IMG/VR virus record: IMGVR_UViG_3300027834_000005
Location: 248,001 to 312,000 of that record
DNA length: 64,000 nucleotides
Direction: 5' to 3' (one strand)
Shown piece by piece: positions 21,696 to 60,974 of this stretch. The notes beneath the pieces are model-generated. The model worked only from the letters and a program-made list of their open reading frames with translations. It had not been told where the DNA came from and ran no database searches. The position numbers and the translations under genes were made by a program. Each line of letters opens with the position of its first letter. Position 1 is the stretch's first letter.

Positions 21696-22362
21696 CATAT
21701 GTAAATTCTGTAAGAAAGGATTTAGCTCTGAGAGAACTCTAGCAGCGCATATGTGTGTCAAGAAACGTCGATTTGCAGATAAAGATGCACCAGGATCTAT
21801 GTTAGGTTACAGGGTATTTCAAAGGTTCTATGAACTTACATCACGTAAGAGCGAACCAAAAAGCGTGTATGAATTCATAGACAGCTCCCACTACAACGCA
21901 TTCGTTAAATTCGCCAGATATATGGTAGATTTGAATCCGTTAGTTCCAGATCAATTCATAGACTACGTTATTACTAACGGAATCAAAATGAAGGACTGGG
22001 ATAAGCCATCCATTTACGATAAATTCTTAGGTGAATACATTCGTAAAGAGCCGGTGAAAAGAGCACTAGAAAGATCCATAATCGAAATGGATAAATGGGC
22101 ACAGGAAAACAATACGGAATTTACGAACTTCTTTGAGTACGTCCATCCTGTAGAGGCTGTGTACCTCATTAAGAGCGGTAGAATATCCCCATGGATAATC
22201 TACATATCTGATAACTCATCTAAGCTACTGAGCAGCTTTAACCAAGAACAGGTTAAGATGTTAGCTAATATCATGGACGTAAATTTATGGAACTTTGTGT
22301 TTCATAAGAAAGTTGATGATGTGAAATATGCAAGAGACATTATAAGCGCGGCAGGACTATGA
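21652..22362 (+). CDS. C2H2 zinc-finger-containing conserved hypothetical protein
   Basis: CKFCKKGFSSERTLAAHMC. Confidence 0.6.
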   Translation: MASKPKTSIVRSRDNICKFCKKGFSSERTLAAHMCVKKRRFADKDAPGSMLGYRVFQRFYELTSRKSEPKSVYEFIDSSHYNAFVKFARYMVDLNPLVPDQFIDYVITNGIKMKDWDKPSIYDKFLGEYIRKEPVKRALERSIIEMDKWAQENNTEFTNFFEYVHPVEAVYLIKSGRISPWIIYISDNSSKLLSSFNQEQVKMLANIMDVNLWNFVFHKKVDDVKYARDIISAAGL

Positions 22363-22943
22363 GTATTTTTAAAGGTGATATCGATATTGATGTGGCAAGT
22401 CGTGATGAGGCGCTGAAGAGCGTCCGTCATGTTCGTGCTATGATACGTACCAAAGATGATAAAGAACAAGTACATAACGTGGGTATCTATGTTCAAGATA
22501 TACCTGCTAACCCTATTACAGGGATGGCTACGTTCGAGTACAAGATAGCTGAAGAGTTAGGGTATCAGAAGATCGATGTCCTTAATAATTCGATATATGA
22601 AGAGGTTGAAGATGAAGCTCATCTTGATGCCCTTTGTGAAGAGTGCATGGTACAGTGGGACCTAATGGAACATGAAGAATTCGTGGATCAATTACCTCAC
22701 CTTACTGGTCACTTTGATATTGTTAATAGTATACGCCCACGTAATGTGGATGATCTAGCTGTGGCACTGGCTATTATACGACCAGCAAAGAGACACCTAG
22801 TTGGTAGATCTAGAATTGATATTGATAAAGAGATTTGGGATAAGCCTGCTGATGGCGGTTATCACTTCAAACGTGCGCATAGTTACGCTTACGCCATGTC
22901 ATTAGTAGTAAAAATGAATCTTATTACTGAGAAGATATATTGA
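22359..22943 (+). CDS. dnaE: minimal DNA polymerase III alpha (DnaE)-like protein, catalytic C-terminal fragment
   Basis: GDIDID (catalytic Asp pair), HNVGIYV, GYQKIDVL (third Asp), IIRP, YHFKRAHSYAY match DnaE palm and finger motifs. Confidence 0.78.
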   Translation: MSIFKGDIDIDVASRDEALKSVRHVRAMIRTKDDKEQVHNVGIYVQDIPANPITGMATFEYKIAEELGYQKIDVLNNSIYEEVEDEAHLDALCEECMVQWDLMEHEEFVDQLPHLTGHFDIVNSIRPRNVDDLAVALAIIRPAKRHLVGRSRIDIDKEIWDKPADGGYHFKRAHSYAYAMSLVVKMNLITEKIY

Positions 22944-23124
22944 TCATGTAGTACCGTGTTGGTTCATAGGTATCTGGGTTGACAGTTACGTACGTTTCTA
23001 CTATACCAAGAACATAGATGTCCTTCGGTACGCCTTCACGAATTTCACTTAATGACCTGTGTTCCAAATCTTCATAATATATGAAAGCGGAGTCATTAGC
23101 TAGATATTTAATATGAGATATCAC
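22924..23124 (-). CDS. hypothetical protein
   Basis: Coupled to the upstream minus-strand gene by GTGA overlap. Confidence 0.5.
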   Translation of the reverse strand: MISHIKYLANDSAFIYYEDLEHRSLSEIREGVPKDIYVLGIVETYVTVNPDTYEPTRYYMINISSQ

Positions 23125-23480
23125 TTTGGCTTTCTTACTAAAGTGATTTGACGCTTCTTAACTCTCTTACGTATAAGATTGTTTAAAGAAGTACATGGGC
23201 CAGAAATGACCTCTACGTCTTTTTTGTTAACAGTCCTAAGAAATGGCTTATATCTAGTCATCTCTTCTCTAAGAAAGATATTAATAGGTAGTAAGCGATT
23301 GCTCTCATGCCACCAAGTATCGCCAAGTTCTAATAATCTGGCCTTCTCTTCCTTGATAACGATGCTATCCAAGTCATAATAACTTAGAATTTTCTCGTCA
23401 CTGTTTTGTATAAGGCACAATTTCTCGCCGCCTTGTAAGGATATATGTGTTAAAAATGGGAATTCGTCTGTATTTGTCAT
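23121..23480 (-). CDS. conserved hypothetical late protein
   Basis: FPFLT...WWHESNRLLPINIFL pattern; start moved to MTNTDEF, 5 nt after GATAAATA. Confidence 0.65.
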   Translation of the reverse strand: MTNTDEFPFLTHISLQGGEKLCLIQNSDEKILSYYDLDSIVIKEEKARLLELGDTWWHESNRLLPINIFLREEMTRYKPFLRTVNKKDVEVISGPCTSLNNLIRKRVKKRQITLVRKPK

Positions 23481-23485
23481 AATAG

Positions 23486-23540
23486 TATTTATCATAGCTA
23501 AATCTATCAGCAGTAAAAATCATTCCGAAATCCATAAATA
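23486..23540. promoter_or_regulatory. divergent pair of late promoter motifs
   Basis: TATTTATC at 23486-23493 (minus) and CATAAATA at 23533-23540 (plus), each exactly 5 nt from an ATG. Confidence 0.7.
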
Positions 23541-23545
23541 GAGGT

Positions 23546-24487
23546 ATGTTATATGACTTATATAGATACGACAATTGGTATGATCTGCTGTTTGATAATA
23601 GTAGGTTCACTTGCGAGTGTAATTTGACGGACAACGCGCCTATGAACACAAGATTAGTAAAAATTCATAAAGGGGTCGATAACCTTCTGAAATTCAGAGT
23701 TTTCGATTCCGATAGAAAAAGAGCAAAAATAGACCACCTTAAAATAAGTGGCACATTAATTAATAAAGAGAACCGCGAACGCGTATTAACTGTTAAGGGA
23801 ACACTTGAATGTACTAGAGGTATATTCACAGTTGCTATTCCAGAAGGGCAGTTAGTAGATATCGCCGCTGGTTTCTATGACTTCGTTGTTACTGGCGAAG
23901 AAGACTTTATCCCTAGCCAAGCTGGTGAGATAGTATCTACCCCATTCTATACAGACGCTACTTCTAATATAAGATTAGAAGCTGAAGTGACTGATAGTGT
24001 TGAGAAGGCACCTATTCCAACCACAGAGATAATTGAATGGTCTTCGCAGTCAGTTGAGATAGAAGGCGTATATACTAAATTGTATTACAGCCACCCTATC
24101 GCAGCTAATAGACTAAGAAACCTTAAACATGGAACTCATACATTTACAGTCTCGGCTGAAAATTACCGTGGGTTATTCCAAGCACGTGGATCACTGGAAC
24201 ATATCCCTCCAGCTGCTTCGGATAGAGAAAAGTACTTCCCTCTTAACCTTACTGATTATAGTGAGTTCGCTAGATATGGCGATGTTGACGAGAATGGAAA
24301 ACTACAAACGTTTCATGGTATAGATGCATGGTCTATACAATCTAATGTGCTGTGGATTATTTTCTATTGGGTTGCTACTGATGATGCCGGTGTCCCACAC
24401 CCATCACATCTTGATCCGCCTGAGTTAATCTTAGATGACAATAGTGTCGTTGAGAATAAACTGGATAGAGTACAATTAAGATCATAA
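23546..24487 (+). CDS. putative virion structural protein (beta-rich, BppU-N/Ig-like N-terminus)
   Basis: VKIHKGVDNLLKFRVFDSDRK pattern; late promoter. Confidence 0.55.
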   Translation: MLYDLYRYDNWYDLLFDNSRFTCECNLTDNAPMNTRLVKIHKGVDNLLKFRVFDSDRKRAKIDHLKISGTLINKENRERVLTVKGTLECTRGIFTVAIPEGQLVDIAAGFYDFVVTGEEDFIPSQAGEIVSTPFYTDATSNIRLEAEVTDSVEKAPIPTTEIIEWSSQSVEIEGVYTKLYYSHPIAANRLRNLKHGTHTFTVSAENYRGLFQARGSLEHIPPAASDREKYFPLNLTDYSEFARYGDVDENGKLQTFHGIDAWSIQSNVLWIIFYWVATDDAGVPHPSHLDPPELILDDNSVVENKLDRVQLRS

Positions 24488-24508
24488 AAAAAGCGCCCTA
24501 GGCGCTTT
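24486..24508. terminator. bidirectional terminator between convergent genes
   Basis: A run-GCGCC-cta-GGCGC-T run. Confidence 0.75.
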
Positions 24509-24510
24509 AT

Positions 24511-25074
24511 TTATTTGTGTCTACCGCGATGGCCGCCTGCTGTTCTACTGTAGGTCTTATCGTTCCACCTTTTGTCAGTCTTCATTTTACTGGCTGCTCT
24601 TATGCCAGCATCATCACTAATGTCATTAGCTTTGTTGTTCATGGCACCTTCTATTTTTCTGAATCTTTCTACGCTTAATGAGCCATTCTTTTTCAACTCG
24701 ATAATTGCTTGCTTAGCGTTAAGGTTACCTTTCTTATTATCTAGAATATATTGGTATATTTCTGGATGTCCAGCTTTGAAGTCTTTAATGCTCTCATAAT
24801 CATCTGGATTATAACCCATGGATAGTTTACCCTCTACTTTGTCGGTGTAACCTTTACCATGACAATTGGTGCATATCTTAGTAGGGTTGGTGTCTCCACC
24901 TTGCATAAATTCGTTATTATTTCTCTGTAAAGGTCTGCTGATTCCCTCTTTACCGCTACCCTTACACTGTGGGCAAGTCTGCGCTATAGAGCCATCTGGT
25001 AAATTAATATGGTCTCCGCCTGTTCTGTAGTCAAGGCTAGAACCTTCTCTGTCTACGATTTCTGAAATGATCAT
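24511..25074 (-). CDS. late protein with DnaJ-type CxxCxGxG zinc-finger pair
   Basis: CPQCKGSG and CTNCHGKG; MIISEIV start; own late promoter. Confidence 0.65.
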   Translation of the reverse strand: MIISEIVDREGSSLDYRTGGDHINLPDGSIAQTCPQCKGSGKEGISRPLQRNNNEFMQGGDTNPTKICTNCHGKGYTDKVEGKLSMGYNPDDYESIKDFKAGHPEIYQYILDNKKGNLNAKQAIIELKKNGSLSVERFRKIEGAMNNKANDISDDAGIRAASKMKTDKRWNDKTYSRTAGGHRGRHK

Positions 25075-25097
25075 TGATAGTGTCCGTTAGTTTACTG

Positions 25098-25105
25098 TAT
25101 TTATC
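25098..25105 (-). promoter_or_regulatory. late promoter motif GATAAATA (minus strand)
   Basis: TATTTATC upstream of the 24511..25074 gene. Confidence 0.7.
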
Positions 25106-25111
25106 GTATAT

Positions 25112-25140
25112 TTGCTATAACGCGTAAGTTGTGGTATACT
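25112..25140 (+). promoter_or_regulatory. sigma70-type promoter
   Basis: TTGCTA-17-TATACT with extended TG. Confidence 0.65.
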
Positions 25141-25159
25141 TCCATTTTTGGAGAATACC

Positions 25160-25570
25160 ATGTCCGTGAATTTACAGGTCTATCGAGACAAATTAGAAAA
25201 AATAAAAAATATGAATAGGGTCTATAATAAAAGCGAACATGGCAGCGGCCTAACTAACTATGAAAACGGAAGTTACTCTATAAGTAACGACGGATCAACT
25301 AGATGGTACGATAAAGAAGGCAACCCACATAGGGGTGATGGTCTACCGGCTGTAATTGGACCAGGAAAATTAACACATTATCACCGTGGTAAACTACATA
25401 GAATAGATGGACCGGCACTCATTAGGCAAATTGGGTCCGACAAAGTCTATACTTGGTATGTAGATAATAAAAGAATAACCAGTTGGGAACAGTTCTCTGA
25501 CATGTCCGGCGTGCCATTAGAAGAAGTCATGTTAAAAGTTCTATCTGGGGATTGGCCACCTACGCCATAA
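25160..25570 (+). CDS. G-x-LHRxDGPA repeat protein (MORN-like beta repeats)
   Basis: GNPHRGDGLPAV and GKLHRIDGPAL repeats; GGAG RBS. Confidence 0.65.
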   Translation: MSVNLQVYRDKLEKIKNMNRVYNKSEHGSGLTNYENGSYSISNDGSTRWYDKEGNPHRGDGLPAVIGPGKLTHYHRGKLHRIDGPALIRQIGSDKVYTWYVDNKRITSWEQFSDMSGVPLEEVMLKVLSGDWPPTP

Positions 25571-25575
25571 ACATC

Positions 25576-25604
25576 TTGCCAAACTAGTGTTCCTATGTTA
25601 TAAT
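25576..25604 (+). promoter_or_regulatory. sigma70-type promoter directly abutting the primase ATG
   Basis: TTGCCA-17-TATAAT with extended TG; ATG follows 6 nt later. Confidence 0.75.
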
Positions 25605-25610
25605 AGCCGG

Positions 25611-26630
25611 ATGCTACTAGACACTATTATAGAAACAATTGTACCGAAGTTAGGCGGGTTAAAAGCGAGTCGTAAAGGCTGGCAAACCCGTAACTGTCCA
25701 CTGTGCCCTCATAGAGGACATGGTATAGACAAAAAAAGCAGATTCGGGATGAAGATAGAAGGCGGTACGTCCGTCGCTGTCCATTGTTTCAACTGTGCCT
25801 TCAAAGCCAAGTATGGCAGAGGTTCATTAATCAGCAAAGATTTTGCTTGGTTTATGGAGACTATAGGGGTTCCGTCAGACGATGTCAAGAAAATTAAGTT
25901 CCAATCTTTCAGAGAGAAAGAAGCAGGCGAGATTTTCCAAGATGTTAAGGTTACTGAGGACTCTAGGTCTAAGTGGAAGAAGGTGGATTTACCACCAGAT
26001 TCCCGCTCTGTATTATTCTGGCTGGAAGCCGGTTGTAACGACAAGAATTTGGTAAAGGTTGCCAACTACTGTCTGGAAAGGAAACTTGACCTTACGGATA
26101 TGTACTGGACACCTAACACAGAGCACTCAATGCACAAAAGAATCCTTATGCCTTTCTGGTATAAAGATGAAGTTGTAGGATACAGCGGGAGATACTATGT
26201 TGCGTCACCCGCAAAACACATACGCAGATACCTAAATTTGACTCCAGAAGATTTCATTTATAATCTGGATAAGCAATCTATGGACTATCCATTCATACTA
26301 CTTACAGAGGGCGTCATAGACGCGTATCTATGTAATGGTGTGTCTTGTATGGGAACAATGAACCAAGCGCAGATAGACATTATAAACAGTCTAGGAAAGA
26401 GAGTCATTGTCATCCCTGATAGAGATAAAGATGGTCAATCATTAGTGGACATAGCATTGGCTAATAAATGGGAAGTGAGTTTCCCTAACTGGCGAAAAGA
26501 TATTAAAGATGTGGGTAAGGCAGTTCAGGAATATGGAAGATTGCTGACTGTTAAATCGGTTATTGCCAGTGCCGAACATAACCCTATGAAAATAACACTA
26601 AAAAGGAAGATGGATAACTTTAATGAGTGA
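25611..26630 (+). CDS. gp61: DNA primase (gp61-like)
   Basis: Zn finger CPLC...HCFNC; TOPRIM LTEGVIDA and IPDRDKDG; start moved from 25587. Confidence 0.9.
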   Translation: MLLDTIIETIVPKLGGLKASRKGWQTRNCPLCPHRGHGIDKKSRFGMKIEGGTSVAVHCFNCAFKAKYGRGSLISKDFAWFMETIGVPSDDVKKIKFQSFREKEAGEIFQDVKVTEDSRSKWKKVDLPPDSRSVLFWLEAGCNDKNLVKVANYCLERKLDLTDMYWTPNTEHSMHKRILMPFWYKDEVVGYSGRYYVASPAKHIRRYLNLTPEDFIYNLDKQSMDYPFILLTEGVIDAYLCNGVSCMGTMNQAQIDIINSLGKRVIVIPDRDKDGQSLVDIALANKWEVSFPNWRKDIKDVGKAVQEYGRLLTVKSVIASAEHNPMKITLKRKMDNFNE

Positions 26631-28056
26631 TATAAAGGAATATACTGCTGATATTGAGAACATATTTATAAGATTTTTTGTGACCGACCCTTCACTATTC
26701 GTTAGATGCTTAGGTATCATCGATAGTGAGCATTATTCAGATGCTAATAATAGGAAAGTTGTATTCTTTTTGGCTGATTACGCCAAAGACTACAACGGAC
26801 TACCTACGTTAGAACAGATTAAGGCCGTTACGGGCGTCACAGTAGAAAAACTAACACAGTGCGATGACACGGAACGTGATTGGTTCTTAGATGAATATGA
26901 AAAGTTCGCAAGACATAAACAAATAGAAACAGCCATATTTGCTGCTCCAGATCTGTTGATAGAACACAGGTATGGCGAAGTAGAAGACATGGTAAAGCAA
27001 GCGGTGAGCGTAGGCTTAGTAAAAGACCTAGGTTTGGACTACTTTGCTGATCCCCTGCAGCGTCTTAATGACGTTGCTAATACCAGAGGTGCAATATCTA
27101 CTGGATGGGACGCGTTAGATGAGAAACTGTACGGCGGAGTGAATAGAGGTGAGCTATCTATATTCGCTGGACAATCAGGTGCCGGTAAATCTGTATTCTT
27201 ACAGAATATAGCTGTTAACTGGGTTGAGATGGGCCTGAACGTGATATACGTGACATTGGAACTTAGTGAGAATCTATGTGCCATGCGTATTGACGCTATG
27301 ATCACTGATCATGGAACCAGAGACGTTCTTAAGAATAGGGACGACGTACATCTTAAGCTAAACACCTTTAATAAGAAGTTTGGTGGATCACTTCGTATTA
27401 AACAGATGAAGAACGGATGTACAGCAAACGACATCAAAGCTTTCGTGAAGGAATATGAAATTCAAACTGGCATCAAAGTGGATGCGTTAGTATTGGATTA
27501 CTTAGATCTGTTCATGCCAACCAACGCTAAGATATCTCCAGAAAACTTATTCGTTAAGGATAAGTACGTAACGGAAAACTTACGTGATTTGGCAGTGGAA
27601 TTGGATACCCTATTAGCGACTGCGAGTCAGTTAAATAGATCGTCCCATGAAGACACCGTAGAGTTCACACACGCTAACATCGCTGGTGGTATGAGTAAGA
27701 TCAACACTGCGGATAACGTGTTTGGTATCTTTACTACGCCGACAATGAAAGAGAATGGTAGATACCAGCTTCAATTCATGAAAACGCGTTCTAGTGCCGG
27801 TGTTGGTTCTAAGATTGATCTTGGCTTTAATGTAAAAACGCTTAGGATACATGACTTGGCCCCAGACGCGGTAAGCTCTATACAGTTAAATACGACTGGA
27901 GTGATTAATAAGTTGGGAAGTGATCCTAGCGTAGTTACTGGTGGTACTGGTGCATCTCCTGCTCCTGCTCCTGCTGCTACTACAGATGATGATGGAAAGA
28001 CTCCGGCAGTTGGCGATTTCAATGCTTTACAGAGTATCATTAAGAAATTGAATTAA
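26623..28056 (+). CDS. gp41: replicative DnaB-like helicase (gp41-like)
   Basis: AGQSGAGKS, TLELSE, LDYLDL, TASQLNR, K.R motifs. Confidence 0.93.
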   Translation: MSDIKEYTADIENIFIRFFVTDPSLFVRCLGIIDSEHYSDANNRKVVFFLADYAKDYNGLPTLEQIKAVTGVTVEKLTQCDDTERDWFLDEYEKFARHKQIETAIFAAPDLLIEHRYGEVEDMVKQAVSVGLVKDLGLDYFADPLQRLNDVANTRGAISTGWDALDEKLYGGVNRGELSIFAGQSGAGKSVFLQNIAVNWVEMGLNVIYVTLELSENLCAMRIDAMITDHGTRDVLKNRDDVHLKLNTFNKKFGGSLRIKQMKNGCTANDIKAFVKEYEIQTGIKVDALVLDYLDLFMPTNAKISPENLFVKDKYVTENLRDLAVELDTLLATASQLNRSSHEDTVEFTHANIAGGMSKINTADNVFGIFTTPTMKENGRYQLQFMKTRSSAGVGSKIDLGFNVKTLRIHDLAPDAVSSIQLNTTGVINKLGSDPSVVTGGTGASPAPAPAATTDDDGKTPAVGDFNALQSIIKKLN

Positions 28057-28060
28057 ACTT

Positions 28061-28068
28061 GATAAATA
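28061..28068 (+). promoter_or_regulatory. late promoter motif GATAAATA
   Basis: Exact motif at the start of a virion-type gene block. Confidence 0.7.
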
Positions 28069-28079
28069 GGGAATGGAAG

Positions 28080-53147: not shown

Positions 53148-53163
53148 ACGTGGAGAACAAAGA

Positions 53164-53658: not shown

Positions 53659-53661
53659 GTC

Positions 53662-53690
53662 TTTACAAAAAAGTCGTGGTGTGGTAAAAT
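53662..53690 (+). promoter_or_regulatory. sigma70-type promoter
   Basis: TTTACA-17-TAAAAT with extended TG. Confidence 0.6.
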
Positions 53691-53724
53691 ACGCACCATA
53701 AAACATACCTAGAGCTTATTTATT

Positions 53725-53889
53725 ATGGAAGAAGACGTTATTGCAGAGTTAGAACGACATAAAAAGTTCATAGCTGGAATGTATGAAATATTATCTGCCG
53801 AAGGATACTTCGGTATAGCTACTCAGTGCGAAGAGCTTACTGAGAGCACAGAAAACTTAATTGAAAGACTAAAAAATGATAAACTTTGA
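53725..53889 (+). CDS. 54-aa small protein (not in ORF track)
   Basis: MEEDVIAELERHKK...; lies between the promoter and the next gene. Confidence 0.5.
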   Translation: MEEDVIAELERHKKFIAGMYEILSAEGYFGIATQCEELTESTENLIERLKNDKL

Positions 53890-54622
53890 TAATGTAACAA
53901 TAGTTAATACCGAAACAACTGGACTTGACTTCAAACAAGACCAAGTCATAGCATTATGCGTAGGATATAAGTCATCCACTGGTAAGTGGGATAATATGAC
54001 ATCTTATTGTAAAGCTGATGTTCCTATTACGCCAGAAATTTCATACCTACATGACATTACTGAAAGTATGTTAGGCGATAAGAGACTTCATGAGTTAGAT
54101 GGCGTTATACCTGACGTGAATGAATACGTTGTAATGTGTAATTCAACTTTTCATGCAGGCATGATTAACGGTAATGGCAGTAAAATGTTATCCGGTAAAA
54201 AATTGATATGCGTTAGTAGAATAAGTAAGAAGCTTGATGCGTTAGGTTTGGGCATGACTAATTATAAATTGCCATACTTGAATCATTTCTTCGGGGCGAA
54301 CATAAAAAGAAATGATTATGAAACCGACACTGCTATGCATAACGCCATCATAGGTAAAGTGTTCGAGAAGCAAGTAGAAATGATGAAGGCTTTAGGGCAG
54401 ATTCATGAATATAATCTTGAAGAGATCTATGAGTGGTTAGAAGCGCCTATTATATATGAAAATATGACGTTTGGTAAACATGTCGGTAAGCCTATGGTAG
54501 AAATACCTATTACTTACTGGACGTGGGCCTTAAGCAACATGGATTCATTGCAGGAAGATGGCGATAAGTACGATTCTGACTTAGCTGCCTCTGTGGCTGC
54601 CGCTTTAGATAAGATTCTATAG
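53876..54622 (+). CDS. DEDDh exonuclease X-like protein with DUF3820-like C-terminus, probably catalytically degenerate
   Basis: NTETTG in place of DTETTG; H.IT..ML; C-terminal MTFGKH.G....EIP..Y..W. Confidence 0.7.
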   Translation: MINFDNVTIVNTETTGLDFKQDQVIALCVGYKSSTGKWDNMTSYCKADVPITPEISYLHDITESMLGDKRLHELDGVIPDVNEYVVMCNSTFHAGMINGNGSKMLSGKKLICVSRISKKLDALGLGMTNYKLPYLNHFFGANIKRNDYETDTAMHNAIIGKVFEKQVEMMKALGQIHEYNLEEIYEWLEAPIIYENMTFGKHVGKPMVEIPITYWTWALSNMDSLQEDGDKYDSDLAASVAAALDKIL

Positions 54623-54961
54623 CGGAGTAGGAACATCTGGGGTATCTTGGACGAAATAGTCAGGGTCGAATCGTTGGTATTTGTCATGTGGCATACCAGC
54701 ATTAGCTTTAGCCTCTTCTCTTCCTCGATATCCAGCAGATTGCATATCACCTACGACTGGAGTAGAGGTCCAATCCTCTTCTTCGTTATCAACATCATCC
54801 GTGACTACGGGCGTGCCCCCTTTATTATCTTTGGCTTTCTTTTTAGCCTTAGATTCCTCTTCTTCTTTATAAGAAGATGATTCAGGGTTCAACTCAGCAT
54901 CCAATTCATTGGTGGCTGAAAAGTATTTGTCGTTTGTCTCGAAAAGTTCTATAAGTCTCAT
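54617..54961 (-). CDS. acidic putative internal head protein (solitary minus-strand late gene)
   Basis: MRLIELFE start 5 nt after GATAAATA (start moved from 55168). Confidence 0.65.
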   Translation of the reverse strand: MRLIELFETNDKYFSATNELDAELNPESSSYKEEEESKAKKKAKDNKGGTPVVTDDVDNEEEDWTSTPVVGDMQSAGYRGREEAKANAGMPHDKYQRFDPDYFVQDTPDVPTPL

Positions 54962-54966
54962 GCTAT

Positions 54967-54974
54967 TATTTATC
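54967..54974 (-). promoter_or_regulatory. late promoter motif GATAAATA (minus strand)
   Basis: TATTTATC. Confidence 0.7.
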
Positions 54975-54981
54975 AAAAACA

Positions 54982-55010
54982 TTGACCTTATGTGGTCTTT
55001 GTAGTATAAT
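54982..55010 (+). promoter_or_regulatory. sigma70-type promoter
   Basis: TTGACC-17-TATAAT. Confidence 0.75.
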
Positions 55011-55033
55011 ACACGCATTAAAGGAGAGCCACA

Positions 55034-55240
55034 ATGAAGAAAGATTATAAAATCAGTGACATCAGCCAAATAACCCGATATAATGGGTTCACTGAGATGC
55101 TCTTGCAAGAAGATTACAAGAAATTCAAAGAAGGTCAGTACTCTAGTGCCGTGTATGTTGCAGAACAAAAGCAGTTCTATGTGTATGGCGAGTTAACCTT
55201 CGAAAAAGTTAACGTAGATGAGAATCCATTCAATGATTAA
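55034..55240 (+). CDS. hypothetical protein
   Basis: AAAGGAG RBS. Confidence 0.65.
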   Translation: MKKDYKISDISQITRYNGFTEMLLQEDYKKFKEGQYSSAVYVAEQKQFYVYGELTFEKVNVDENPFND

Positions 55241-55520
55241 CGTAAACGGCATTGTAACCAACACAGACGCTATCGCTATAGACCCTTTGGAAGTATTTGT
55301 GCTCCTAACTATTAAAGCTTTAGTAGTAATCGACACTGAAAAGTTCGATGGTGCAGATAGTGTCGGTCTGGATATGAAAACAGACGAAGTTGTAGTTATT
55401 AAAGGTACAGGCGTTACACGTTATGGGCCTGATGATTTTGAATGTGAGTCTTATGATCGCATTGCCAACTTGTTAATCGGTAAACTTGAATTTTTAGAAG
55501 TAGCAAAAAATATTAGATGA
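55233..55520 (+). CDS. hypothetical protein
   Basis: Overlapping ORF; start moved to MINVNG. Confidence 0.55.
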   Translation: MINVNGIVTNTDAIAIDPLEVFVLLTIKALVVIDTEKFDGADSVGLDMKTDEVVVIKGTGVTRYGPDDFECESYDRIANLLIGKLEFLEVAKNIR

Positions 55521-55525
55521 TTATG

Positions 55526-55554
55526 TTGACACCAATATAAAAATCGAATAGAAT
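55526..55554 (+). promoter_or_regulatory. sigma70-type promoter for clpP
   Basis: TTGACA-17-TAGAAT. Confidence 0.75.
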
Positions 55555-55591
55555 TACAACTCAATACTTTCACTGACAAAAGAGAAAAAAC

Positions 55592-56236
55592 ATGAATACT
55601 CCATTATCTAGCTTAGTACCTATGGTCGTTGAACAAACCCCTAACGGCGAACGCTCTTACGATATCTTCTCACGTTTACTTAAAGAACGTATCATCTACG
55701 TAAGTGGTGAAGTCCATGACGGTATGGCTGATATTGTTACTGCGCAAATGATGTTCCTTGAAGCGGAAAATCCTGAAAGCGATATCAATATGTACATCAA
55801 TTCTCCTGGTGGTTCTGTTACTGCTGGCTTAGCCATCTATAACACCGCTCAATTTATCGAATGTGACGTGAAAACTATCGTTACTGGTCAAGCAGCATCA
55901 ATGGGTAGCTTCTTAGCTCAATCAGGTACTGCCGGTAAGCGTTTTGTAATGGGCGAATCACGTACTATGATCCATCGTGTTAGTGCCGGTACAGCCAACA
56001 CACAAGGTTCTATCCACGTTATGCGTGAAGAGTTGGAAGATATCAAACGTTCGGTTGAAGAAGGTGAGCGTTTGAACGAACGTTTGACTCAACTGTATGT
56101 TCAGCATAACTCTGTGGGTAAAACTTACGAAGAATTGTTCGAAACCATGCGTTACGACACGTTCTTATCAGCAGAAGATGCTGTTAAAGGCGGATTCGCT
56201 GACCGTGTAATCAGATCACGTGCCGACTTAACCTAA
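55592..56236 (+). CDS. clpP: ATP-dependent Clp protease proteolytic subunit
   Basis: [38 protein letters not shown] (Ser), MIH (His), DTFLSA (Asp). Confidence 0.96.
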
Positions 56237-56248
56237 GTCTGTGCATAG

Positions 56249-56273
56249 GGGTGGCACAGGAGTGCTGCCCTTT
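56249..56273 (+). terminator. probable terminator after clpP
   Basis: GGGTGGCAC-agga-GTGCTGCCC followed by TTT. Confidence 0.65.
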
Positions 56274-56296
56274 ATAATTTATATCAAGGAAGAAAA

Positions 56297-56707
56297 ATGA
56301 AAGACCAGAATATTTTAAAGAACTACACACATTTTGTTGACACACTTACTAGTGATGAAAGCACTAAATTTGAATCCTATATCGCACGTTTGACTCAATT
56401 GAATGAGCAAGGCTGTGATATTGCTAGATTGGACACAGCATCTCAAGGTATGTCGGCGGAAGCAGGCGAATTTGAAGAAGTTGTTAAGAAAATCAAGTAT
56501 CAGGGTAAAGAATACAACGAAGATAATATTTTCCACATGCAACGCGAGTTGGGTGATATCATTTTCTATTGGATCAACGCGTGTATGGCGTTAGATATCG
56601 ATCCGATCAAAGTTATAGAGATGAATGTCGAAAAGCTGGAAAGCAGATACCCAAGTGGATCATTCGACGTACATTTCAGTGAGAACAGGAAGGACGGTGA
56701 CGTGTGA
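56297..56707 (+). CDS. MazG-like nucleoside triphosphate pyrophosphohydrolase
   Basis: GMSAEAGEFEEVVKK...RELGDIIFY...N..KL..RYP. Confidence 0.88.
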   Translation: MKDQNILKNYTHFVDTLTSDESTKFESYIARLTQLNEQGCDIARLDTASQGMSAEAGEFEEVVKKIKYQGKEYNEDNIFHMQRELGDIIFYWINACMALDIDPIKVIEMNVEKLESRYPSGSFDVHFSENRKDGDV

Positions 56708-57039
56708 GCGTAGTATTAATAACAACCACGGGCGAAGCTTTGCCCTTGGTATGTGTATCGAATATCTACGAGCGTGACCAAGAAACAGAAAGTTTTTTAG
56801 AGTTTAAATTGTCATGTAGTCTTTTTATGGAAGGCGATAATTACTTAACAGTTAAAACTATCCACGGTGAATACGCACAGATAGATGTTAGAGACATGCA
56901 TAACAGTAGAGTTCTATCCCCTCTTGGGCTGATAGGTTCTGAGTACATGTATGACGGAACTCTAAAGAATAATCTGTATTGTATGTGGGCAACACTCATA
57001 GAACAAGGTATTATACATACCAAACCAACCAAAGACTGA
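56704..57039 (+). CDS. hypothetical protein
   Basis: Coupled ORF. Confidence 0.55.
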   Translation: MSVVLITTTGEALPLVCVSNIYERDQETESFLEFKLSCSLFMEGDNYLTVKTIHGEYAQIDVRDMHNSRVLSPLGLIGSEYMYDGTLKNNLYCMWATLIEQGIIHTKPTKD

Positions 57040-57050
57040 CGGAGAATACC

Positions 57051-57290
57051 ATGAGTAATTCATTAGGCGGCGAACCAGTTACAAGACGTTTCGAAAAAAA
57101 ATGGAACGAATTCATTGATGACTTTTGTTATCGTGAACTTGGTAATAAAGGTGCCAATATCATGACGCCAGAAGACTTCATGTTCTTGAAGTTATCTTCG
57201 ACTGATGAAATTGTCGTGGAAAACGACGGAGTAAAACCACCTGACGGTTATGAAATCGGTAGTGATGGATATGCCAAGCGTACTTGGTAA
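57051..57290 (+). CDS. hypothetical protein
   Basis: GGAG RBS before MSNSLGG. Confidence 0.6.
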   Translation: MSNSLGGEPVTRRFEKKWNEFIDDFCYRELGNKGANIMTPEDFMFLKLSSTDEIVVENDGVKPPDGYEIGSDGYAKRTW

Positions 57291-58242
57291 AAACTTAGTA
57301 ACGGAAATAATGCAAATGGGTAACTATTCGTGGTGGGCCGAAAACAATGGCGGTCAGTATGGAAGTAAAAATAAAACTAGAGCTGAATTGATACGTGACT
57401 TGGCGCAAAGAACAAAGCAAAAAGAACGTATCAATATAGTAGAGGCTGCCATCAAAAAAGGCACGTTATTTGACGTGTGTAATGTGGACTCTATGAATGA
57501 CCAAGACCTTATTGGTCTTATTGATGCCGGTATCATAGATTACACTGTTCTGTCTAACCGTAAAGGTTACATGTCTAGGCATGTAAGGATAGGCCTGTTT
57601 GCAGCTAAGCCAAATAACGAAACATATAAGTTGATATCAGATCGTATTCCTAGTAAGGATGAATATGGTGTCCTTGTTAGAGGGAAAGCTGGATTCAAAC
57701 TTAAGAAGTATGGACTTTCAGACACTCTTAAGCTTCATTGTTATGATTGGGGCGAATATGTGTCTAAAGGTAGAAAATCTACTGATGAAAGACTCGCTGA
57801 GTTTAAATCTGTATTCCATACCTTTAGGAATAAGTCAGATGTTAGGGCTATGTTATTCAATACGCCTTTATTAATGTCTGTCCTTGATACGTCTGACTAC
57901 CAACGTAGTCCTTTAACTGCCAAGGAGCTATGCTCGTTCATTAACCGTGACTTGAAACGTGCAGATAGAAAAGATGTGATAACTCGTGATCTTTATGAAT
58001 GGTTAGAGCAAGAGATATTCATGGAAACGTTGAGTGGGAAGTCTAAAGTGTCTAAGCCTATGCAGAAGAATCTCGATGAGCTTCTAGAAATATTGGAAGA
58101 GAAGGAAGATCCTAACTACGGTATGGAATCTGAAGGTGAATCCGCAGTGATTGAATATCAAGATCATGATAGTGATGATATTGATGCGATGGTTGAAATA
58201 TTAGCTGCTCACCACGAAGATAAAGGCTACGTGAAAAAATAA
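57250..58242 (+). CDS. hypothetical protein (start uncertain)
   Basis: 330-aa ORF in operon. Confidence 0.6.
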   Translation: MKSVVMDMPSVLGKNLVTEIMQMGNYSWWAENNGGQYGSKNKTRAELIRDLAQRTKQKERINIVEAAIKKGTLFDVCNVDSMNDQDLIGLIDAGIIDYTVLSNRKGYMSRHVRIGLFAAKPNNETYKLISDRIPSKDEYGVLVRGKAGFKLKKYGLSDTLKLHCYDWGEYVSKGRKSTDERLAEFKSVFHTFRNKSDVRAMLFNTPLLMSVLDTSDYQRSPLTAKELCSFINRDLKRADRKDVITRDLYEWLEQEIFMETLSGKSKVSKPMQKNLDELLEILEEKEDPNYGMESEGESAVIEYQDHDSDDIDAMVEILAAHHEDKGYVKK

Positions 58243-58244
58243 TA

Positions 58245-58273
58245 TTGACCGTGAATGTAATTGTTGGTATTAT
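58245..58273 (+). promoter_or_regulatory. sigma70-type promoter
   Basis: TTGACC-17-TATTAT with extended TG. Confidence 0.65.
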
Positions 58274-58296
58274 TTAAAAAAGTGGAGAATGATGTT

Positions 58297-58632
58297 ATGG
58301 CTAAGAAGAAAAAATTAATGATGGATCAGTACATATCAGGCAAAGACTATCGTATGTTCATAGTTAAGTGTGATGATATTGCTGAAGTAAAGAAAGTTGT
58401 GCGTTGGTCTCGTAAGGGTTGCATAGGAACATTCTGTACATCTCAAATTCTTTCTGAAAAACAGACATTTCACTCTCGTATGAGCGGAGCTAAATCTGAA
58501 TTTTATGCATATGTTGGTTTTACCAATGACGATGATTCTATGGCAATGCAGCTATCTTTTGATATGGCCAAAGAAGTTCCTATGTGGCCATCCACCACAC
58601 GATTTAGTGTGTATGTGATGTCAGATGATTGA
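58297..58632 (+). CDS. hypothetical protein
   Basis: GGAG RBS; start moved to MAKKKK. Confidence 0.6.
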   Translation: MAKKKKLMMDQYISGKDYRMFIVKCDDIAEVKKVVRWSRKGCIGTFCTSQILSEKQTFHSRMSGAKSEFYAYVGFTNDDDSMAMQLSFDMAKEVPMWPSTTRFSVYVMSDD

Positions 58633-58942
58633 TCAACCTTACTCTGAATTAGAATGGCCATTATGCGGTAAAAAAATCGACATAGGTGGTCCAGACGGTA
58701 ACGTTTTCTTCCTTATAGGTAAGGTGTCTGGCGCTATACGAAGTGTTTACGGTAATGATGATGCCGAAGCTTACTCTGAAGGTGCTCACGGTAGAACTTT
58801 CAAGGCTATGGGATTTACCGATTGGACTTATGAAGACGTTCTCAAGTATACCATAGACTCCACTGGTATCGAACTCACCGCTGATAGAGATATTGGCATT
58901 AATGAAATACTATATACCATTACTAGGAATGATTACCTATGA
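58625..58942 (+). CDS. hypothetical protein
   Basis: IDIGGPDGNVFFLIG pattern common in phage hypotheticals. Confidence 0.6.
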   Translation: MIDQPYSELEWPLCGKKIDIGGPDGNVFFLIGKVSGAIRSVYGNDDAEAYSEGAHGRTFKAMGFTDWTYEDVLKYTIDSTGIELTADRDIGINEILYTITRNDYL

Positions 58943-59271
58943 ATACTGACGAACCTTATAGCCTTAGTGTCCAAAAGCGTCGTGTATTCGGCGTAACTAT
59001 GAAACTGAACCTGTATATGTTGGTTCAGGGTCTTTTGGGTCTTATATCATTCACGATGTTCAAGCGTTGTTTGACGACTGGTCCTTCTCAGGAACTAGCA
59101 AGAGAACGTGCTATTCTCAGAACTATGAATATTGATGATAAAGATAAATCTGAAGAGTCACGTCAACGTGCACGTGTGCTAAAAATGGATGATGAAGAGA
59201 AGAGTGATGAATTCCTTCGTATGATGTACGGTGACGACTACGAAAAGATTCTGGAGACACAGGAGGGGTAG
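58939..59271 (+). CDS. hypothetical protein, possibly membrane-associated
   Basis: Coupled ORF. Confidence 0.55.
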   Translation: MNTDEPYSLSVQKRRVFGVTMKLNLYMLVQGLLGLISFTMFKRCLTTGPSQELARERAILRTMNIDDKDKSEESRQRARVLKMDDEEKSDEFLRMMYGDDYEKILETQEG

Positions 59272-59272
59272 T

Positions 59273-59410
59273 GTGATCATAACTTTCATAAATATAGTAA
59301 TAAGCGCAGAGAAGTCTGTGAAACGTGAGAATTTGCTAAGATGGGCGGCTATTGATATGTCTCTCATCTGCATTGCTATGGGAGCATTCATGTTATTGAC
59401 TTATACATAA
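59273..59410 (+). CDS. 45-aa hydrophobic small protein (not in ORF track)
   Basis: AGGAGGGG RBS and GTG start; C-terminal TM-like segment; an internal CATAAATA suggests an alternative shorter start. Confidence 0.4.
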   Translation: MIITFINIVISAEKSVKRENLLRWAAIDMSLICIAMGAFMLLTYT

Positions 59411-59414
59411 GGAA

Positions 59415-59729
59415 ATGTATATGTATGATCTAATAGATCCTAAAGATTTAAGTGATGAGGAACTCATGGCGAAGTTACTGAAGAGTAACCAGATGCTAAT
59501 GAATTACCGAGGCACGCAATTCCAAGGAATGGTGGATAGTCTTGAATCATTGATTGGCGTACTAGGCGAAGAAGCTGAATATCGTCAACAAATGAAACAA
59601 GAAGAAGCCAATAAAGAACGCGAAAAGCAGAGTGCTGGTCGCTATGGCAGAAAGAAAAAATCCAAGAAGAAAAAACCAAATCCCAACGTTGTGGCTACTC
59701 TTGGTCATATCAAAGGCGTTGATGATTGA
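59415..59729 (+). CDS. hypothetical coiled-coil protein with basic tail
   Basis: AAGGA RBS. Confidence 0.6.
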   Translation: MYMYDLIDPKDLSDEELMAKLLKSNQMLMNYRGTQFQGMVDSLESLIGVLGEEAEYRQQMKQEEANKEREKQSAGRYGRKKKSKKKKPNPNVVATLGHIKGVDD

Positions 59730-59736
59730 GGAATCT

Positions 59737-60468
59737 ATGATAGACGAAAATATTCACGTGTATAACACGATTGAACACAATTTCAGCGGCATCAGGTCGT
59801 TCGACAGACACATGTACCCAGTTAATTGGGAACTAGTCATAAAACTCGCCGGTAAGGCACAAGAAGGCATCTCCGAAGAAGACAAAGAAGCCCAAATGAG
59901 GGATATAACAGTATCCTATCAACGCGTAAAGTGGTGGTTGCAAAACTTCATGATGGATATCTTTGCATGTGGATCTACAGACGTACCTACACTCGAAGCA
60001 TTTTTTACTGGTGACTTCGACAATGTATTTGTGTCTACTCCCCAAGAACCAACTGACAGCATACTTAGTGAAGCCTTATTCAAGAAAGTATCGGTATTGT
60101 CTGGTGATAACATAGAGGTGCTTCAAGTATCCCTTAAATCAACAGATTTTGAATCTACCTTTTACTTCAGTGATAAAGCTGGCTATCAGATTAACATGGA
60201 CAATAGCGTGTTTGAAGGTAAGTCTCTATATACAGAGCCTTGGTGGGCAAGATATGACTGTGATACGTGGGAACCAATGCACGTAGAAGGTATGTCTAAT
60301 GATGACTTGCTTGAGAGCTTAGAGACTGCTTCGGATCTAAACCAAATCACCAAATTAATCCATGACACTACCTACGGTGCTGCCGAGGAAGGTGAGATAG
60401 AGGTCCCTGACAAACTAACATCTACTATTGCTATGGCGGACTTGAAATGGAAACCAACGAAAACTTAG
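59737..60468 (+). CDS. hypothetical protein, possible degenerate QueD/PTPS T-fold
   Basis: W.LVIKL.G ... EPTDSILSEALF...L.V.L pattern; start moved from 59632. Confidence 0.4.
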   Translation: MIDENIHVYNTIEHNFSGIRSFDRHMYPVNWELVIKLAGKAQEGISEEDKEAQMRDITVSYQRVKWWLQNFMMDIFACGSTDVPTLEAFFTGDFDNVFVSTPQEPTDSILSEALFKKVSVLSGDNIEVLQVSLKSTDFESTFYFSDKAGYQINMDNSVFEGKSLYTEPWWARYDCDTWEPMHVEGMSNDDLLESLETASDLNQITKLIHDTTYGAAEEGEIEVPDKLTSTIAMADLKWKPTKT

Positions 60469-60974
60469 ATGAATATGGAAGGTACTTACTGAGTAGTAAC
60501 GACGCGGTTGAGTTGATGCTACACGGTAAAGATGTTTCAGGTTGTTTTTTCCTTGACGAACAGGACGTATTAATGTATAATACGAACTGTAGTCAGGTTT
60601 TAGGTGAAACTGGACTTAATATCTACGAGAAGAATGAAACATCCTTTGAGGACTTTCATGCTGAGCAAGTCAATAAGTGGAATATCCCTTGGGAGTACCA
60701 AATACTTGATATCAAACATCATATAATGAATTTATGTGATGGTCAAGAAGAAATTGACAGAGTTACTCATGAGATGGAGCTATTTGAGAAATTTAATTTA
60801 CTTAATATGCTTAGGTTCATGAAATACTTCGTAGATACCATGAGAAAAGAAAGAACAGTGTGGGGCGTCGGACGTGGCTCTAGTGTATCCGTTTATACTT
60901 TGTATTTAATGGGCGTGCATAGGGTTGACAGTATCAAGTACAACTTAGACTGTAAAGAATTTTTTAAGGAATAG
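60447..60974 (+). CDS. dnaE: DnaE-like protein, N-terminal palm fragment
   Basis: RV..E..LF......F..Y.VD......VWGVGRGSS......YL.GVH..D.....L...EF matches DnaE RL..EL...GPGRGS...LGIT.IDP..L.FERF. Confidence 0.8.
   Translation: METNENLDEYGRYLLSSNDAVELMLHGKDVSGCFFLDEQDVLMYNTNCSQVLGETGLNIYEKNETSFEDFHAEQVNKWNIPWEYQILDIKHHIMNLCDGQEEIDRVTHEMELFEKFNLLNMLRFMKYFVDTMRKERTVWGVGRGSSVSVYTLYLMGVHRVDSIKYNLDCKEFFKE

What the first reader, a model, noticed from the sequence alone, without database searches (positions are those of the whole stretch)
22359..60974. Minimal DnaE-like polymerase core split into two genes about 37.5 kb apart, with no intein
60447..60974 carries the DnaE segment up to the GRGS...FERF motif and ends EFFKE. 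22359..22943 starts MSIFKGDIDID, the motif that immediately follows in DnaE, and carries all three putative catalytic Asp. Together they total 369 aa against roughly 1160 aa for E. coli DnaE. PHP, most of the fingers, HhH, OB and clamp-binding regions appear absent. Such a stripped beta-nucleotidyltransferase is unlikely to be a processive replicase and may be a primer-synthesis, repair or template-independent enzyme. Short DnaE-like genes are annotated in some other jumbo phages, so the split may be known, but I know of no established function.
Basis: partly seen in the sequence, partly recalled or inferred. Interest (0 to 1): 0.75.

Follow-up and report, generated by a model that had tools for sequence, protein, structure and literature searches.

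The report
Split minimal Pol III polymerase core
A marine jumbo phage encodes the catalytic heart of the bacterial replicative DNA polymerase (Pol III alpha) as two small genes 37.5 kb apart. The finding is real, but the arrangement was already described for this phage group in 2021 and its function is still untested.

Summary
ORF 60447..60974 (175 aa) is the first half of the Pol III alpha palm and ends just after the GRGS nucleotide-binding loop. ORF 22359..22943 (194 aa) starts with the DxDxD catalytic strand. It also carries the third catalytic Asp and a shortened finger helix with the steric-gate His. By structural alignment the break lies at E. coli alpha residues 394/396, which leaves no room for an intein. 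The two halves are predicted to bind (ipSAE 0.89, best control 0.00). Rare natural 375-376 aa proteins, found on four metagenome contigs, carry both halves fused head to tail. The genome has no PHP, thumb, full finger, HhH or OB part, but it does have a T4-type family B polymerase.

This is the "minimal split DNA polymerase III alpha" that Iyer et al. (Viruses 2021, PMC7824862) reported for group 2.2 jumbo phages, so it is already known.

- the natural fused forms, which are derived from split ancestors;
- the invariant steric-gate His, which points to dNTP use;
- a C2H2-type zinc-finger protein kept just upstream of the C-half, even in the deepest branch of the family;
- an epsilon-like exonuclease kept in the same phage clade.

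The most likely role is a heterodimeric, distributive DNA polymerase for recombination and repair synthesis. That role is inferred, not shown.

The parts
60447..60974 (+). N-half of the minimal Pol III alpha core (175 aa). Residues 1-78 form a phage-specific subdomain. Residues 79-175 are the first part of the Pol-beta-like palm and end with the GRGS nucleotide-binding loop.
   Evidence: Pfam PF07733 E 1.7e-7 and phrog_11127 E 1.5e-44. AF2 model pLDDT 87. VIA-align Z 10-12 to alpha 280-394. Invariant GVGRGSSV.
22359..22943 (+). C-half of the minimal Pol III alpha core (194 aa). It carries the DxDxD strand (D7, D9, D11), K71/D73, an RPxK motif (141-144), and a finger helix with H174, the steric-gate position. 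The thumb and most of the fingers are deleted.
   Evidence: phrog_11778 E 5.9e-60. AF2 model pLDDT 93.7. Foldseek top 14 hits are all Pol III alpha. VIA-align 1-194 = E. coli alpha 396-780. Invariant residues. PDB profile alignment.
21652..22362 (+). Candidate accessory protein (236 aa): an N-terminal C2H2/C2HC zinc finger (C17, C20, H33, C35 invariant) followed by a roughly 200-aa phage-specific domain. Its stop codon overlaps the C-half start codon (ATGA).
   Evidence: phrog_11058 E 9.5e-60. Found upstream on the same strand in 71 of 72 related viral loci, in 93 phage records, and in the deepest sister clade (L172). Its function is not known, and binding to the polymerase was not tested.
53876..54622 (+). 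Candidate partner: a stand-alone DEDDh 3'-5' exonuclease of the DnaQ/epsilon/ExoX family (248 aa).
   Evidence: NCBIfam Pol III epsilon model E 2e-15, below its cut-off. Pfam RNase_T E 7.5e-5. Present in 82 phage records of the same clade, lying near one half or the other. The link to the split core is an inference only.
23121..23495 (-). Conserved convergent neighbour of the C-half (124 aa, phrog_11637, unknown function).
   Evidence: Immediately downstream in 80 of 80 related loci and also next to the fused gene in L006. The Atlas search gave no lead.
61001..61393 (+). Conserved neighbour directly downstream of the N-half (130 aa, Lys-rich, phrog_14844, unknown function).
   Evidence: Within 0-83 nt downstream in most of the 78 loci (of 80 N-half loci) that carry it.

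Best explanation
The two ORFs are the two halves of one enzyme: a heterodimeric, stripped-down C-family (Pol III alpha-type) nucleotidyltransferase.

What each half contributes:
- The N-half supplies the first part of the Pol-beta-like palm and the GRGS loop, which holds the triphosphate of the incoming nucleotide.
- The C-half supplies the metal-binding Asp residues (the DxDxD strand plus D73), the Lys next to D73, and a shortened finger helix that carries the steric-gate His.

Neither half has a complete active site, so activity needs the non-covalent complex. In that complex the C-terminus of the N-half sits next to the N-terminus of the C-half, as in the uninterrupted chain.

Shown by computation: homology and fold of both halves, the exact break point, conservation of the catalytic residues, a confident predicted interface, and natural fused variants.

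Inferred: the complex is an active, dNTP-using, DNA-templated but distributive polymerase. It would do short-patch synthesis (D-loop extension, gap filling, repair) beside the phage's T4-type family B replicase. It may work with the conserved zinc-finger protein and the epsilon-like exonuclease.

My confidence that this is a split Pol III alpha core that works as a heterodimer is about 0.95. My confidence in the recombination/repair polymerase role is about 0.45.
For: Identity as Pol III alpha:
- Pfam, PHROG and NCBIfam hits.
- PDB profile searches return only Pol III alpha, and colinearly.
- Foldseek and VIA-align return only C-family polymerases. The N-half (79-175) aligns to alpha 280-394 and the C-half (1-194) to alpha 396-780.

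One enzyme:
- Complex prediction gave ipSAE 0.89 against a best control of 0.00, with about 190 contacts that include the GRGS loop and the DxDxD strand.
- Three distinct natural 375-376 aa proteins, on four contigs from four samples, carry N then C with a linker of about 8 residues.
- In the fused form the Pfam PF07733 match runs straight across the junction.

An active enzyme under selection:
- The family has 604 representatives at 50% identity and at least 598 viral contigs.
- D7, D9, D11, K71, D73, R141, P142, K144, K171 and H174 are invariant, as is GVGRGSSV.

dNTP use:
- H174 aligns with the FNKSH motif of alpha.
- Its E. coli equivalent, H760, is the proposed steric gate and is invariant in Pol III alpha (PMC8485763).

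Not the replicase:
- The genome has a family B polymerase and a clamp loader.
- It has no PHP, finger, HhH or OB part.

Context:
- The C-half lies inside the block gp32 - UvsX - UvsY - UvsW - x - x - ZnF - C-half ... primase - DnaB-like helicase.
- The N-half lies 1.4 kb upstream of the clamp loader.
Against: - No biochemical or genetic data exist for any member. Two literature searches found nothing after the 2021 description.
- The thumb is missing, and so is the finger segment between the RPxK motif and the steric-gate helix. In E. coli alpha that segment is about 115 residues; here it is about 25. How primer and template are held is therefore unexplained.
- The high complex score may partly reflect the model's memory of single-chain Pol III alpha structures, as the tool itself warns.
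- Gene order is conserved across this whole phage group, so neighbourhood is weak evidence for a functional link.
- No expression data could be obtained for this phage or for PA5oct.
Confidence: 0.55

Rival explanations
1. It is a second replisome polymerase that shares bulk replication with the family B enzyme, for example by synthesising one of the two strands. This is the first option offered by Iyer et al. 2021.
For: The C-half lies two to three genes from the primase and the DnaB-like helicase, and the N-half lies just upstream of the clamp loader. The pair is universal in the clade alongside PolB.
Against: There is no clamp-binding, HhH or OB domain, no thumb and no PHP. At 369 aa it is closer in size to gap-filling enzymes. 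T4-type replisomes use the family B polymerase on both strands (established knowledge).
Confidence: 0.15
2. It is not a templated polymerase. Instead it is another Pol-beta-fold nucleotidyltransferase activity, such as terminal tailing, de novo priming, or synthesis of a nucleotide signal or anti-defence molecule.
For: The parts of alpha that grip duplex DNA are lost. Small Pol-beta-fold enzymes often have such roles (general knowledge).
Against: Features specific to Pol III alpha and tied to templated dNTP insertion are retained and invariant: the steric-gate His, the RPxK motif and K71. The genes sit among replication and recombination genes, not among defence or counter-defence genes.
Confidence: 0.15
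3. The two ORFs are decaying or non-catalytic remnants of an ancestral dnaE gene.
For: One early genome paper described such a phage protein as appearing 'truncated' (CBB paper).
Against: Hundreds of diverged homologues keep every catalytic residue. Both halves fold with high confidence. Both genes are kept in about 92-96 phage genomes.
Confidence: 0.03
4. The halves are joined covalently after translation by a split intein, as in cyanobacterial DnaE, or by some other splicing.
For: Split dnaE genes joined by inteins are a known precedent (general knowledge).
Against: No intein or Hint family was hit. The chains abut at alpha 394/396 with no spare residues. The fused natural forms have only a linker of about 8 residues.
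Confidence: 0.01

Closest known systems
Minimal split DNA polymerase III alpha of group 2.2 jumbo phages (Iyer, Anantharaman, Krishnan, Burroughs, Aravind, Viruses 2021;13:63, PMC7824862)
   Same: It is the same thing. The N-terminal NTP-binding part and the C-terminal Mg/DNA-binding part are separate proteins from distant genes. No other Pol III domain is present, and a family B polymerase is. Homologues of both halves occur in RaK2-like phages, PA5oct, Atu_ph07, Phosso, SCTP-2, XacN1 and others, 34 to 224 kb apart.
   Different: This copy is from an uncultivated marine phage and is at most 49% identical to any isolate's protein. I did not see the following in that paper's text: the natural fused variants, the conserved zinc-finger neighbour, the steric-gate conservation, or a scored complex prediction.
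Bacterial Pol III alpha (DnaE) and PolC, the C-family replicases
   Same: It shares the Pol-beta-like palm with the DxD...D catalytic Asp residues, the GRGS loop, the Lys beside the third Asp, and the finger helix with the steric-gate His. Structural Z scores are 8-12.
   Different: It totals 369 aa against about 1160. PHP, thumb, most of the fingers, the beta-clamp-binding part, HhH and OB are all absent. It is split into two chains, and the N-half has a phage-specific 78-aa N-terminal subdomain.
Split-intein DnaE of cyanobacteria (DnaE-n / DnaE-c)
   Same: A dnaE-type polymerase encoded by two distant genes.
   Different: There the two products are full-size pieces spliced by a split intein into one chain. 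Here there are no intein sequences, and the halves must work as a non-covalent pair.
Minimal Pol-beta-fold repair polymerases (family X, e.g. the 174-aa Pol X of African swine fever virus). This is an analogy drawn from general knowledge.
   Same: A virus-encoded, very small Pol-beta-fold polymerase lacking standard DNA-gripping domains, present beside a family B replicase. It shows that such a small enzyme can do templated gap filling.
   Different: It belongs to a different family (X, not C) and is a single chain. This is a functional analogy only and was not tested here.
PHP-less single-chain DnaE-like polymerases of 551-563 aa in related phage contigs (L048 15127-16818, L086 16951-18606)
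   Same: Phage-encoded C-family polymerases without a PHP domain.
   Different: They are single chains with the full palm and finger Pfam domains, and in L086 the gene lies next to a DnaB-like helicase. They co-occur with the split C-half in the same contigs, so the split enzyme is not simply their equivalent.

Membership tests
Split minimal Pol III alpha of group 2.2 jumbo phages (Iyer et al. 2021) | Two separate proteins, the NTP-binding N part and the Mg/DNA-binding C part, encoded by distant genes | tested here: met
   ORFs at 60447 and 22359, 37.5 kb apart. The break maps to alpha 394/396.
Split minimal Pol III alpha of group 2.2 jumbo phages (Iyer et al. 2021) | No other Pol III alpha domain in the genome | tested here: met
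   PF02811 and PF17657 gave no match. The full-length dnaE model TIGR00594 hit only the N-half.
Split minimal Pol III alpha of group 2.2 jumbo phages (Iyer et al. 2021) | A jumbo phage with a T4-type replication set that includes a family B polymerase | tested here: met
   A 347 kb virus record. PF00136 matches across the record ends. gp32, UvsX, UvsY, UvsW, primase, DnaB-like helicase and clamp loader are present.
Split minimal Pol III alpha of group 2.2 jumbo phages (Iyer et al. 2021) | Orthology to the proteins of RaK2-like, PA5oct and Atu_ph07 phages | tested here: met
   tblastn found 96 records for the C-half and 92 for the N-half, at 33-49% identity and about full length. Both halves fall in the matching PHROG families.
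C-family DNA polymerase catalytic core (Pol III alpha / PolC) | Pol-beta-like palm with three catalytic Asp residues and the GRGS nucleotide-binding loop | tested here: met
   D7, D9, D11 and D73 are invariant, as is GVGRGSSV. They align to the PDIDID motif and to alpha 322-392.
C-family DNA polymerase catalytic core (Pol III alpha / PolC) | Steric-gate His in the finger helix (E. coli H760) | tested here: met
   H174 is invariant and aligns to FNKSH of DnaE1. Its role in E. coli is described in PMC8485763.
Full-length DnaE/PolC replicase architecture | N-terminal PHP domain | tested here: not met
   No PF02811 match anywhere in the genome. N-half residues 1-78 have no alpha counterpart.
Full-length DnaE/PolC replicase architecture | Thumb, complete fingers, clamp-binding, HhH and OB domains | tested here: not met
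   The 194 residues of the C-half span alpha 396-780. There is no PF17657 match, and nothing beyond the N-half matches TIGR00594.
Full-length DnaE/PolC replicase architecture | DNA-templated, processive polymerase activity | not testable with these tools
   Needs biochemistry.
Split-intein DnaE | Intein (Hint) halves at the break that splice the two products | tested here: not met
   No intein or Hint hit. There are no unaligned residues at either side of the break.

The most novel reading that the evidence does not exclude
The two halves may be only the catalytic centre of a larger, phage-specific modular C-family polymerase built from four small proteins. On this reading the C2H2 zinc-finger protein, which stays just upstream of the C-half even in the deepest branch of the family, replaces the missing thumb and DNA-gripping parts. 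The clade-wide epsilon-like DEDDh exonuclease would proofread. This would be a 'Pol III core in pieces' dedicated to recombination-dependent or repair synthesis. Because the active site is composite, activity could be gated by when each half is expressed.
Probability: 0.2. Interest if true: 0.7.

Novelty: already known. Interest (0 to 1): 0.4.

Why it matters
This would be the smallest C-family polymerase core known. It is the only one that occurs naturally as two non-covalently paired chains, and it is kept by a large, widespread group of jumbo phages that already have a family B replicase.

If it proves active, it would define the minimal parts of Pol III alpha needed for catalysis. It would give a natural two-piece polymerase for enzymology and engineering. 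It would also bear on how the bacterial replicase arose; Iyer et al. see it as a model of the ancestral state.

Because the discovery is published, the value here is confirmation plus a few new handles for experiments: the fused natural variants, the steric-gate conservation and the candidate partners.

Tried and rejected
- I looked for further dnaE pieces in the 347 kb genome (PHP, fingers, the full-length dnaE model). None were found. There is no family A polymerase either.
- I looked for loci where the two halves lie close together. The two apparent N-half hits within 10 kb of a C-half (L048, L086) were a different gene, a 551-563 aa single-chain PHP-less DnaE-like polymerase.
- In the sister clade of the fused forms I suspected that the 200-aa gene overlapping the C-half start was an adjacent N-half. 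It is the zinc-finger family protein instead.
It has one tblastn hit among isolates, hits in 13 of 80 viral loci, and a weak PA5oct homologue. Its only look-alike is a T-fold/PTPS lead below the reliability marks. I do not count it as part of the system.
- Atlas and PDB profile searches on the zinc-finger protein and on the convergent 124-aa neighbour gave nothing beyond a single classical zinc finger.
- Expression data could not be obtained. The PA5oct supplements are not held. Sequencing runs that hold this phage are marine DNA metagenomes only, with no RNA run shown.
Full report
**1. The observation**

Both ORFs are present at the stated coordinates.
- The N-half is 60447..60974 on the + strand, 175 aa, and ends EFFKE.
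- The C-half is 22359..22943 on the + strand, 194 aa, and starts MSIFKGDIDID.
- Together they make 369 aa, and the genes are 37.5 kb apart on the same strand.
- The C-half start codon overlaps the stop codon of the upstream ORF (ATGA).
- The N-half start lies 22 nt inside its upstream ORF.

**2. Are both halves Pol III alpha?**

Yes, by sequence and by fold.

N-half:
- It passes Pfam's own threshold for DNA_pol3_alpha (E 1.7e-7, profile positions 22-94).
- It belongs to phrog_11127 'DNA polymerase' (E 1.5e-44).
- It hits several NCBIfam Pol III alpha models.

C-half:
- It has no Pfam hit.
- It belongs to phrog_11778 'DNA polymerase' (E 5.9e-60).

Profile searches:
- Profiles built from 58 C-half homologues (A1) and 57 N-half homologues (A2) return only Pol III alpha chains from the PDB.
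- The E-values are weak but the alignments are colinear.
- N-half 104-174 matches E. coli alpha 322-392.
- C-half 4-15, 55-140 and 163-177 match M. tuberculosis DnaE1 413-424, 565-663 and 773-787.

Structure:
- The AlphaFold models are confident, with pLDDT 93.7 for the C-half and 87.4 for the N-half.
- Foldseek's first 14 PDB matches for each half are all Pol III alpha.
- VIA-align puts the whole C-half (1-194) on E. coli alpha 396-780 (Z 8.9), Taq alpha 457-837 (Z 10.1), DnaE1 415-807 (Z 10.0) and PolC 967-1295 (Z 9.5). The first non-polymerase hit has Z 3.5.
- N-half 79-175 lies on E. coli alpha 280-394 (Z 10-11) and DnaE1 305-414 (Z 12.1).

Neither side has unaligned residues, and no intein family is hit, so a split intein is excluded. 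N-half residues 1-78 have no counterpart in alpha.

**3. What is kept and what is lost**

Kept and invariant across the family:
- the DxDxD strand (D7, D9, D11);
- K71 and D73, which match the strand carrying the third catalytic Asp (E. coli D555);
- R141-P142-x-K144;
- K171 and H174;
- in the N-half, G-V-G-R-G-S-S-V.

H174 aligns with the His of the FNKSH motif. In E. coli this is H760, the proposed steric gate against ribonucleotides, which is invariant in Pol III alpha. The same paper names D401, D403 and D555 as the active-site residues (PMC8485763).

Lost:
- PHP;
- the thumb: about 60 residues lie between the DxDxD strand and D73, against about 150 in E. coli;
- most of the fingers: about 25 residues lie between the RPxK motif and the steric-gate helix, against about 115 in E. 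coli;
- everything C-terminal of alpha residue 780.

The Pol III finger domain gives no match in the genome, and the full-length dnaE model finds nothing beyond the N-half itself.

**4. One enzyme from two chains**

The complex prediction gave ipSAE 0.89-0.90 in three runs, against 0.00 for all three controls. It showed about 190 contacts. These include the GRGS loop (N-half 135-148) and the first 14 residues of the C-half. The tool notes that such a score can come from likeness to solved structures. Here that likeness is the point: the halves fit together as the two parts of one alpha palm.

Independent support comes from natural fusions.
- A profile search of 1.84 billion representatives found 604 relatives. 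Nearly all of the 150 best that were listed are about 190 aa or shorter. One is 375 aa (P0254).
- Its residues 30-181 match the N-half to its last residue, and residues 190-368 match the C-half from residue 6.
- Two further fused proteins are 78-81% identical to it.
- The fused gene occurs on four contigs from four samples.
- The Pfam domain match runs across the junction.

In a maximum-likelihood tree the fused trio is one clade (100/100). It nests among stand-alone C-halves inside a deep 12-member clade (100/100). The fusion is therefore a secondary event in a split lineage, unless the root lies on the fused branch.

**5. Distribution**

Homologues of the C-half occur in 96 phage records, and homologues of the N-half in 92. 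These include RaK2-like phages, PA5oct, Atu_ph07, Phosso, SCTP-2, XacN1, RsoM2USA and a Vibrio phage.

The two genes are always far apart:
- about 34 kb in RaK2, GAP32 and CBB;
- about 44 kb in PA5oct;
- 116 kb in SCTP-2;
- 182 kb in Atu_ph07;
- 224 kb in Phosso.

At least 598 (C-half) and 586 (N-half) IMG/VR contigs carry relatives. In 80 of 80 C-half loci no true N-half lies within 10 kb. The window's own phage is an uncultivated marine virus of 347 kb.

**6. Context**

The genome has a family B polymerase. Its gene is cut by the ends of the record. There is no family A polymerase.

The C-half sits in a T4-like recombination and replication block:
- gp32 at 16080
- UvsX at 17164
- UvsY at 18752
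- a UvsW-like helicase at 19217
- two unknown genes
- the zinc-finger protein at 21652
- the C-half at 22359
- a convergent unknown gene
- a virion protein
- primase at 25587
- a DnaB-like helicase at 26623

The N-half is followed by an unknown Lys-rich protein, two GroES-like genes, and the clamp loader at 62346. PA5oct has the same order.

Across related viral loci:
- the zinc-finger protein lies upstream on the same strand in 71 of 72 loci, with a gap of -3 to about 7000 nt;
- the convergent 124-aa gene is adjacent in 80 of 80 loci;
- the Lys-rich protein follows the N-half in 78 of 80 loci, and the clamp loader in 72 of 80.

The link between the zinc-finger protein and the C-half also holds in the deep sister clade, where the two genes overlap by 20 nt (L172).

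A DnaQ/epsilon-family DEDDh exonuclease (53876..54622) is present in 82 records of the same clade. It lies near the C-half in RaK2-like phages, and near the N-half in PA5oct and here.

Gene order is conserved throughout this phage group. These linkages are therefore leads, not proof of partnership.

**7. What is already known**

Iyer et al. [quoted passage not shown] They suggest a role in synthesis of one strand or in repair.

Earlier genome papers had noticed a 'truncated' Pol III alpha and an epsilon subunit in CBB and Atu_ph07. Two literature searches found no experimental follow-up. The finding is therefore real but already known.

**8. Most likely mechanism**

The enzyme is an obligate heterodimer with a composite active site. 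The N-half provides the triphosphate-binding loop. The C-half provides the metal ligands and the sugar-selecting finger helix.

Three things point to a distributive, dNTP-using, DNA-templated polymerase for recombination-associated or repair synthesis beside the family B replicase:
- the invariant steric-gate His;
- the position of the genes among recombination and replication genes;
- the lack of any clamp-binding or duplex-gripping domain.

Very small viral Pol-beta-fold repair polymerases are a functional precedent (general knowledge). This role is an inference, at about 0.45.

The rivals are:
- a true second replisome polymerase (0.15);
- a non-templated nucleotidyltransferase (0.15);
- inactive remnants (0.03);
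- covalent joining of the two halves (0.01).

The unexplained point is how the primer-template is held without a thumb. The conserved zinc-finger protein is the obvious candidate to test.

**9. Verdict**

Interest is 0.4. The object is unusual and its function is open and directly testable, but the discovery itself is in the literature.

Noticed in passing
window 21652..22362 (+): A C2H2/C2HC zinc-finger protein (236 aa, phrog_11058) whose stop codon overlaps the C-half start (ATGA). It lies upstream on the same strand in 71 of 72 related viral loci, occurs in 93 phage records, and is also upstream in the deepest sister clade (L172 627-1229, overlapping by 20 nt). Outside the finger it resembles nothing known.
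   Followed up: partly
window 53876..54622 (+): A stand-alone DnaQ/epsilon/ExoX-family DEDDh exonuclease (248 aa). Homologues occur in 82 phage records of the same clade. They lie about 5 kb upstream of the C-half in RaK2-like phages, and 6-8 kb upstream of the N-half here and in PA5oct.
   Followed up: partly
L048 15127-16818 and L086 16951-18606: Two related viral contigs that carry the split C-half also encode a separate single-chain, PHP-less DnaE-like polymerase of 551-563 aa with full Pfam palm and finger domains. In L086 it lies directly after a DnaB-like helicase. Some relatives may therefore have two different C-family polymerases.
   Followed up: partly
L005-L008 (metagenome contigs): Natural fused N+C proteins of 375-376 aa on four contigs from four samples. 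In L007 and L008 a C5 DNA methylase gene ends 4 nt inside the fused gene. In L006 the convergent phrog_11637-like neighbour is retained.
   Followed up: yes
window 23121..23495 (-): A 124-aa protein of unknown function (phrog_11637) with a basic C-terminal tail. It is convergent with the C-half and adjacent to it in 80 of 80 related loci. Structure and feature searches gave no lead.
   Followed up: partly
window 59737..60468 (+): The ORF overlapping the N-half start by 22 nt is fast-evolving. It is a weak homologue of PA5oct EST35_0287 (21% identity, E 3e-6). Its only look-alikes are T-fold / 6-pyruvoyl-tetrahydropterin-synthase clusters (feature score 0.89, TM 0.48), which is a lead only.
   Followed up: partly
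window 61001..61393 (+): A Lys-rich, probably disordered 130-aa protein (phrog_14844). Among 80 related loci, 78 carry it downstream of the N-half, most within 0-83 nt. GroES-like genes and the clamp loader follow it.
   Followed up: no
window 61435..61728 and 61963..62343 (+): Two GroES-like co-chaperonin genes sit between the N-half and the RFC-like clamp loader at 62346..63275.
   Followed up: no
G000:C1 346225..347232 and 41..589: The family B DNA polymerase gene runs off one end of the virus record and resumes at the other. The Pfam positions overlap (148-196 and 175-343). The record therefore looks like a circularly permuted or terminally redundant assembly rather than one with true ends.
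   Followed up: no
window 21213..21695 (+): A 160-aa ORF (phrog_11758) overlaps the zinc-finger ORF by 44 nt and precedes it in 67 of the 80 related loci. Its function is unknown.
   Followed up: no
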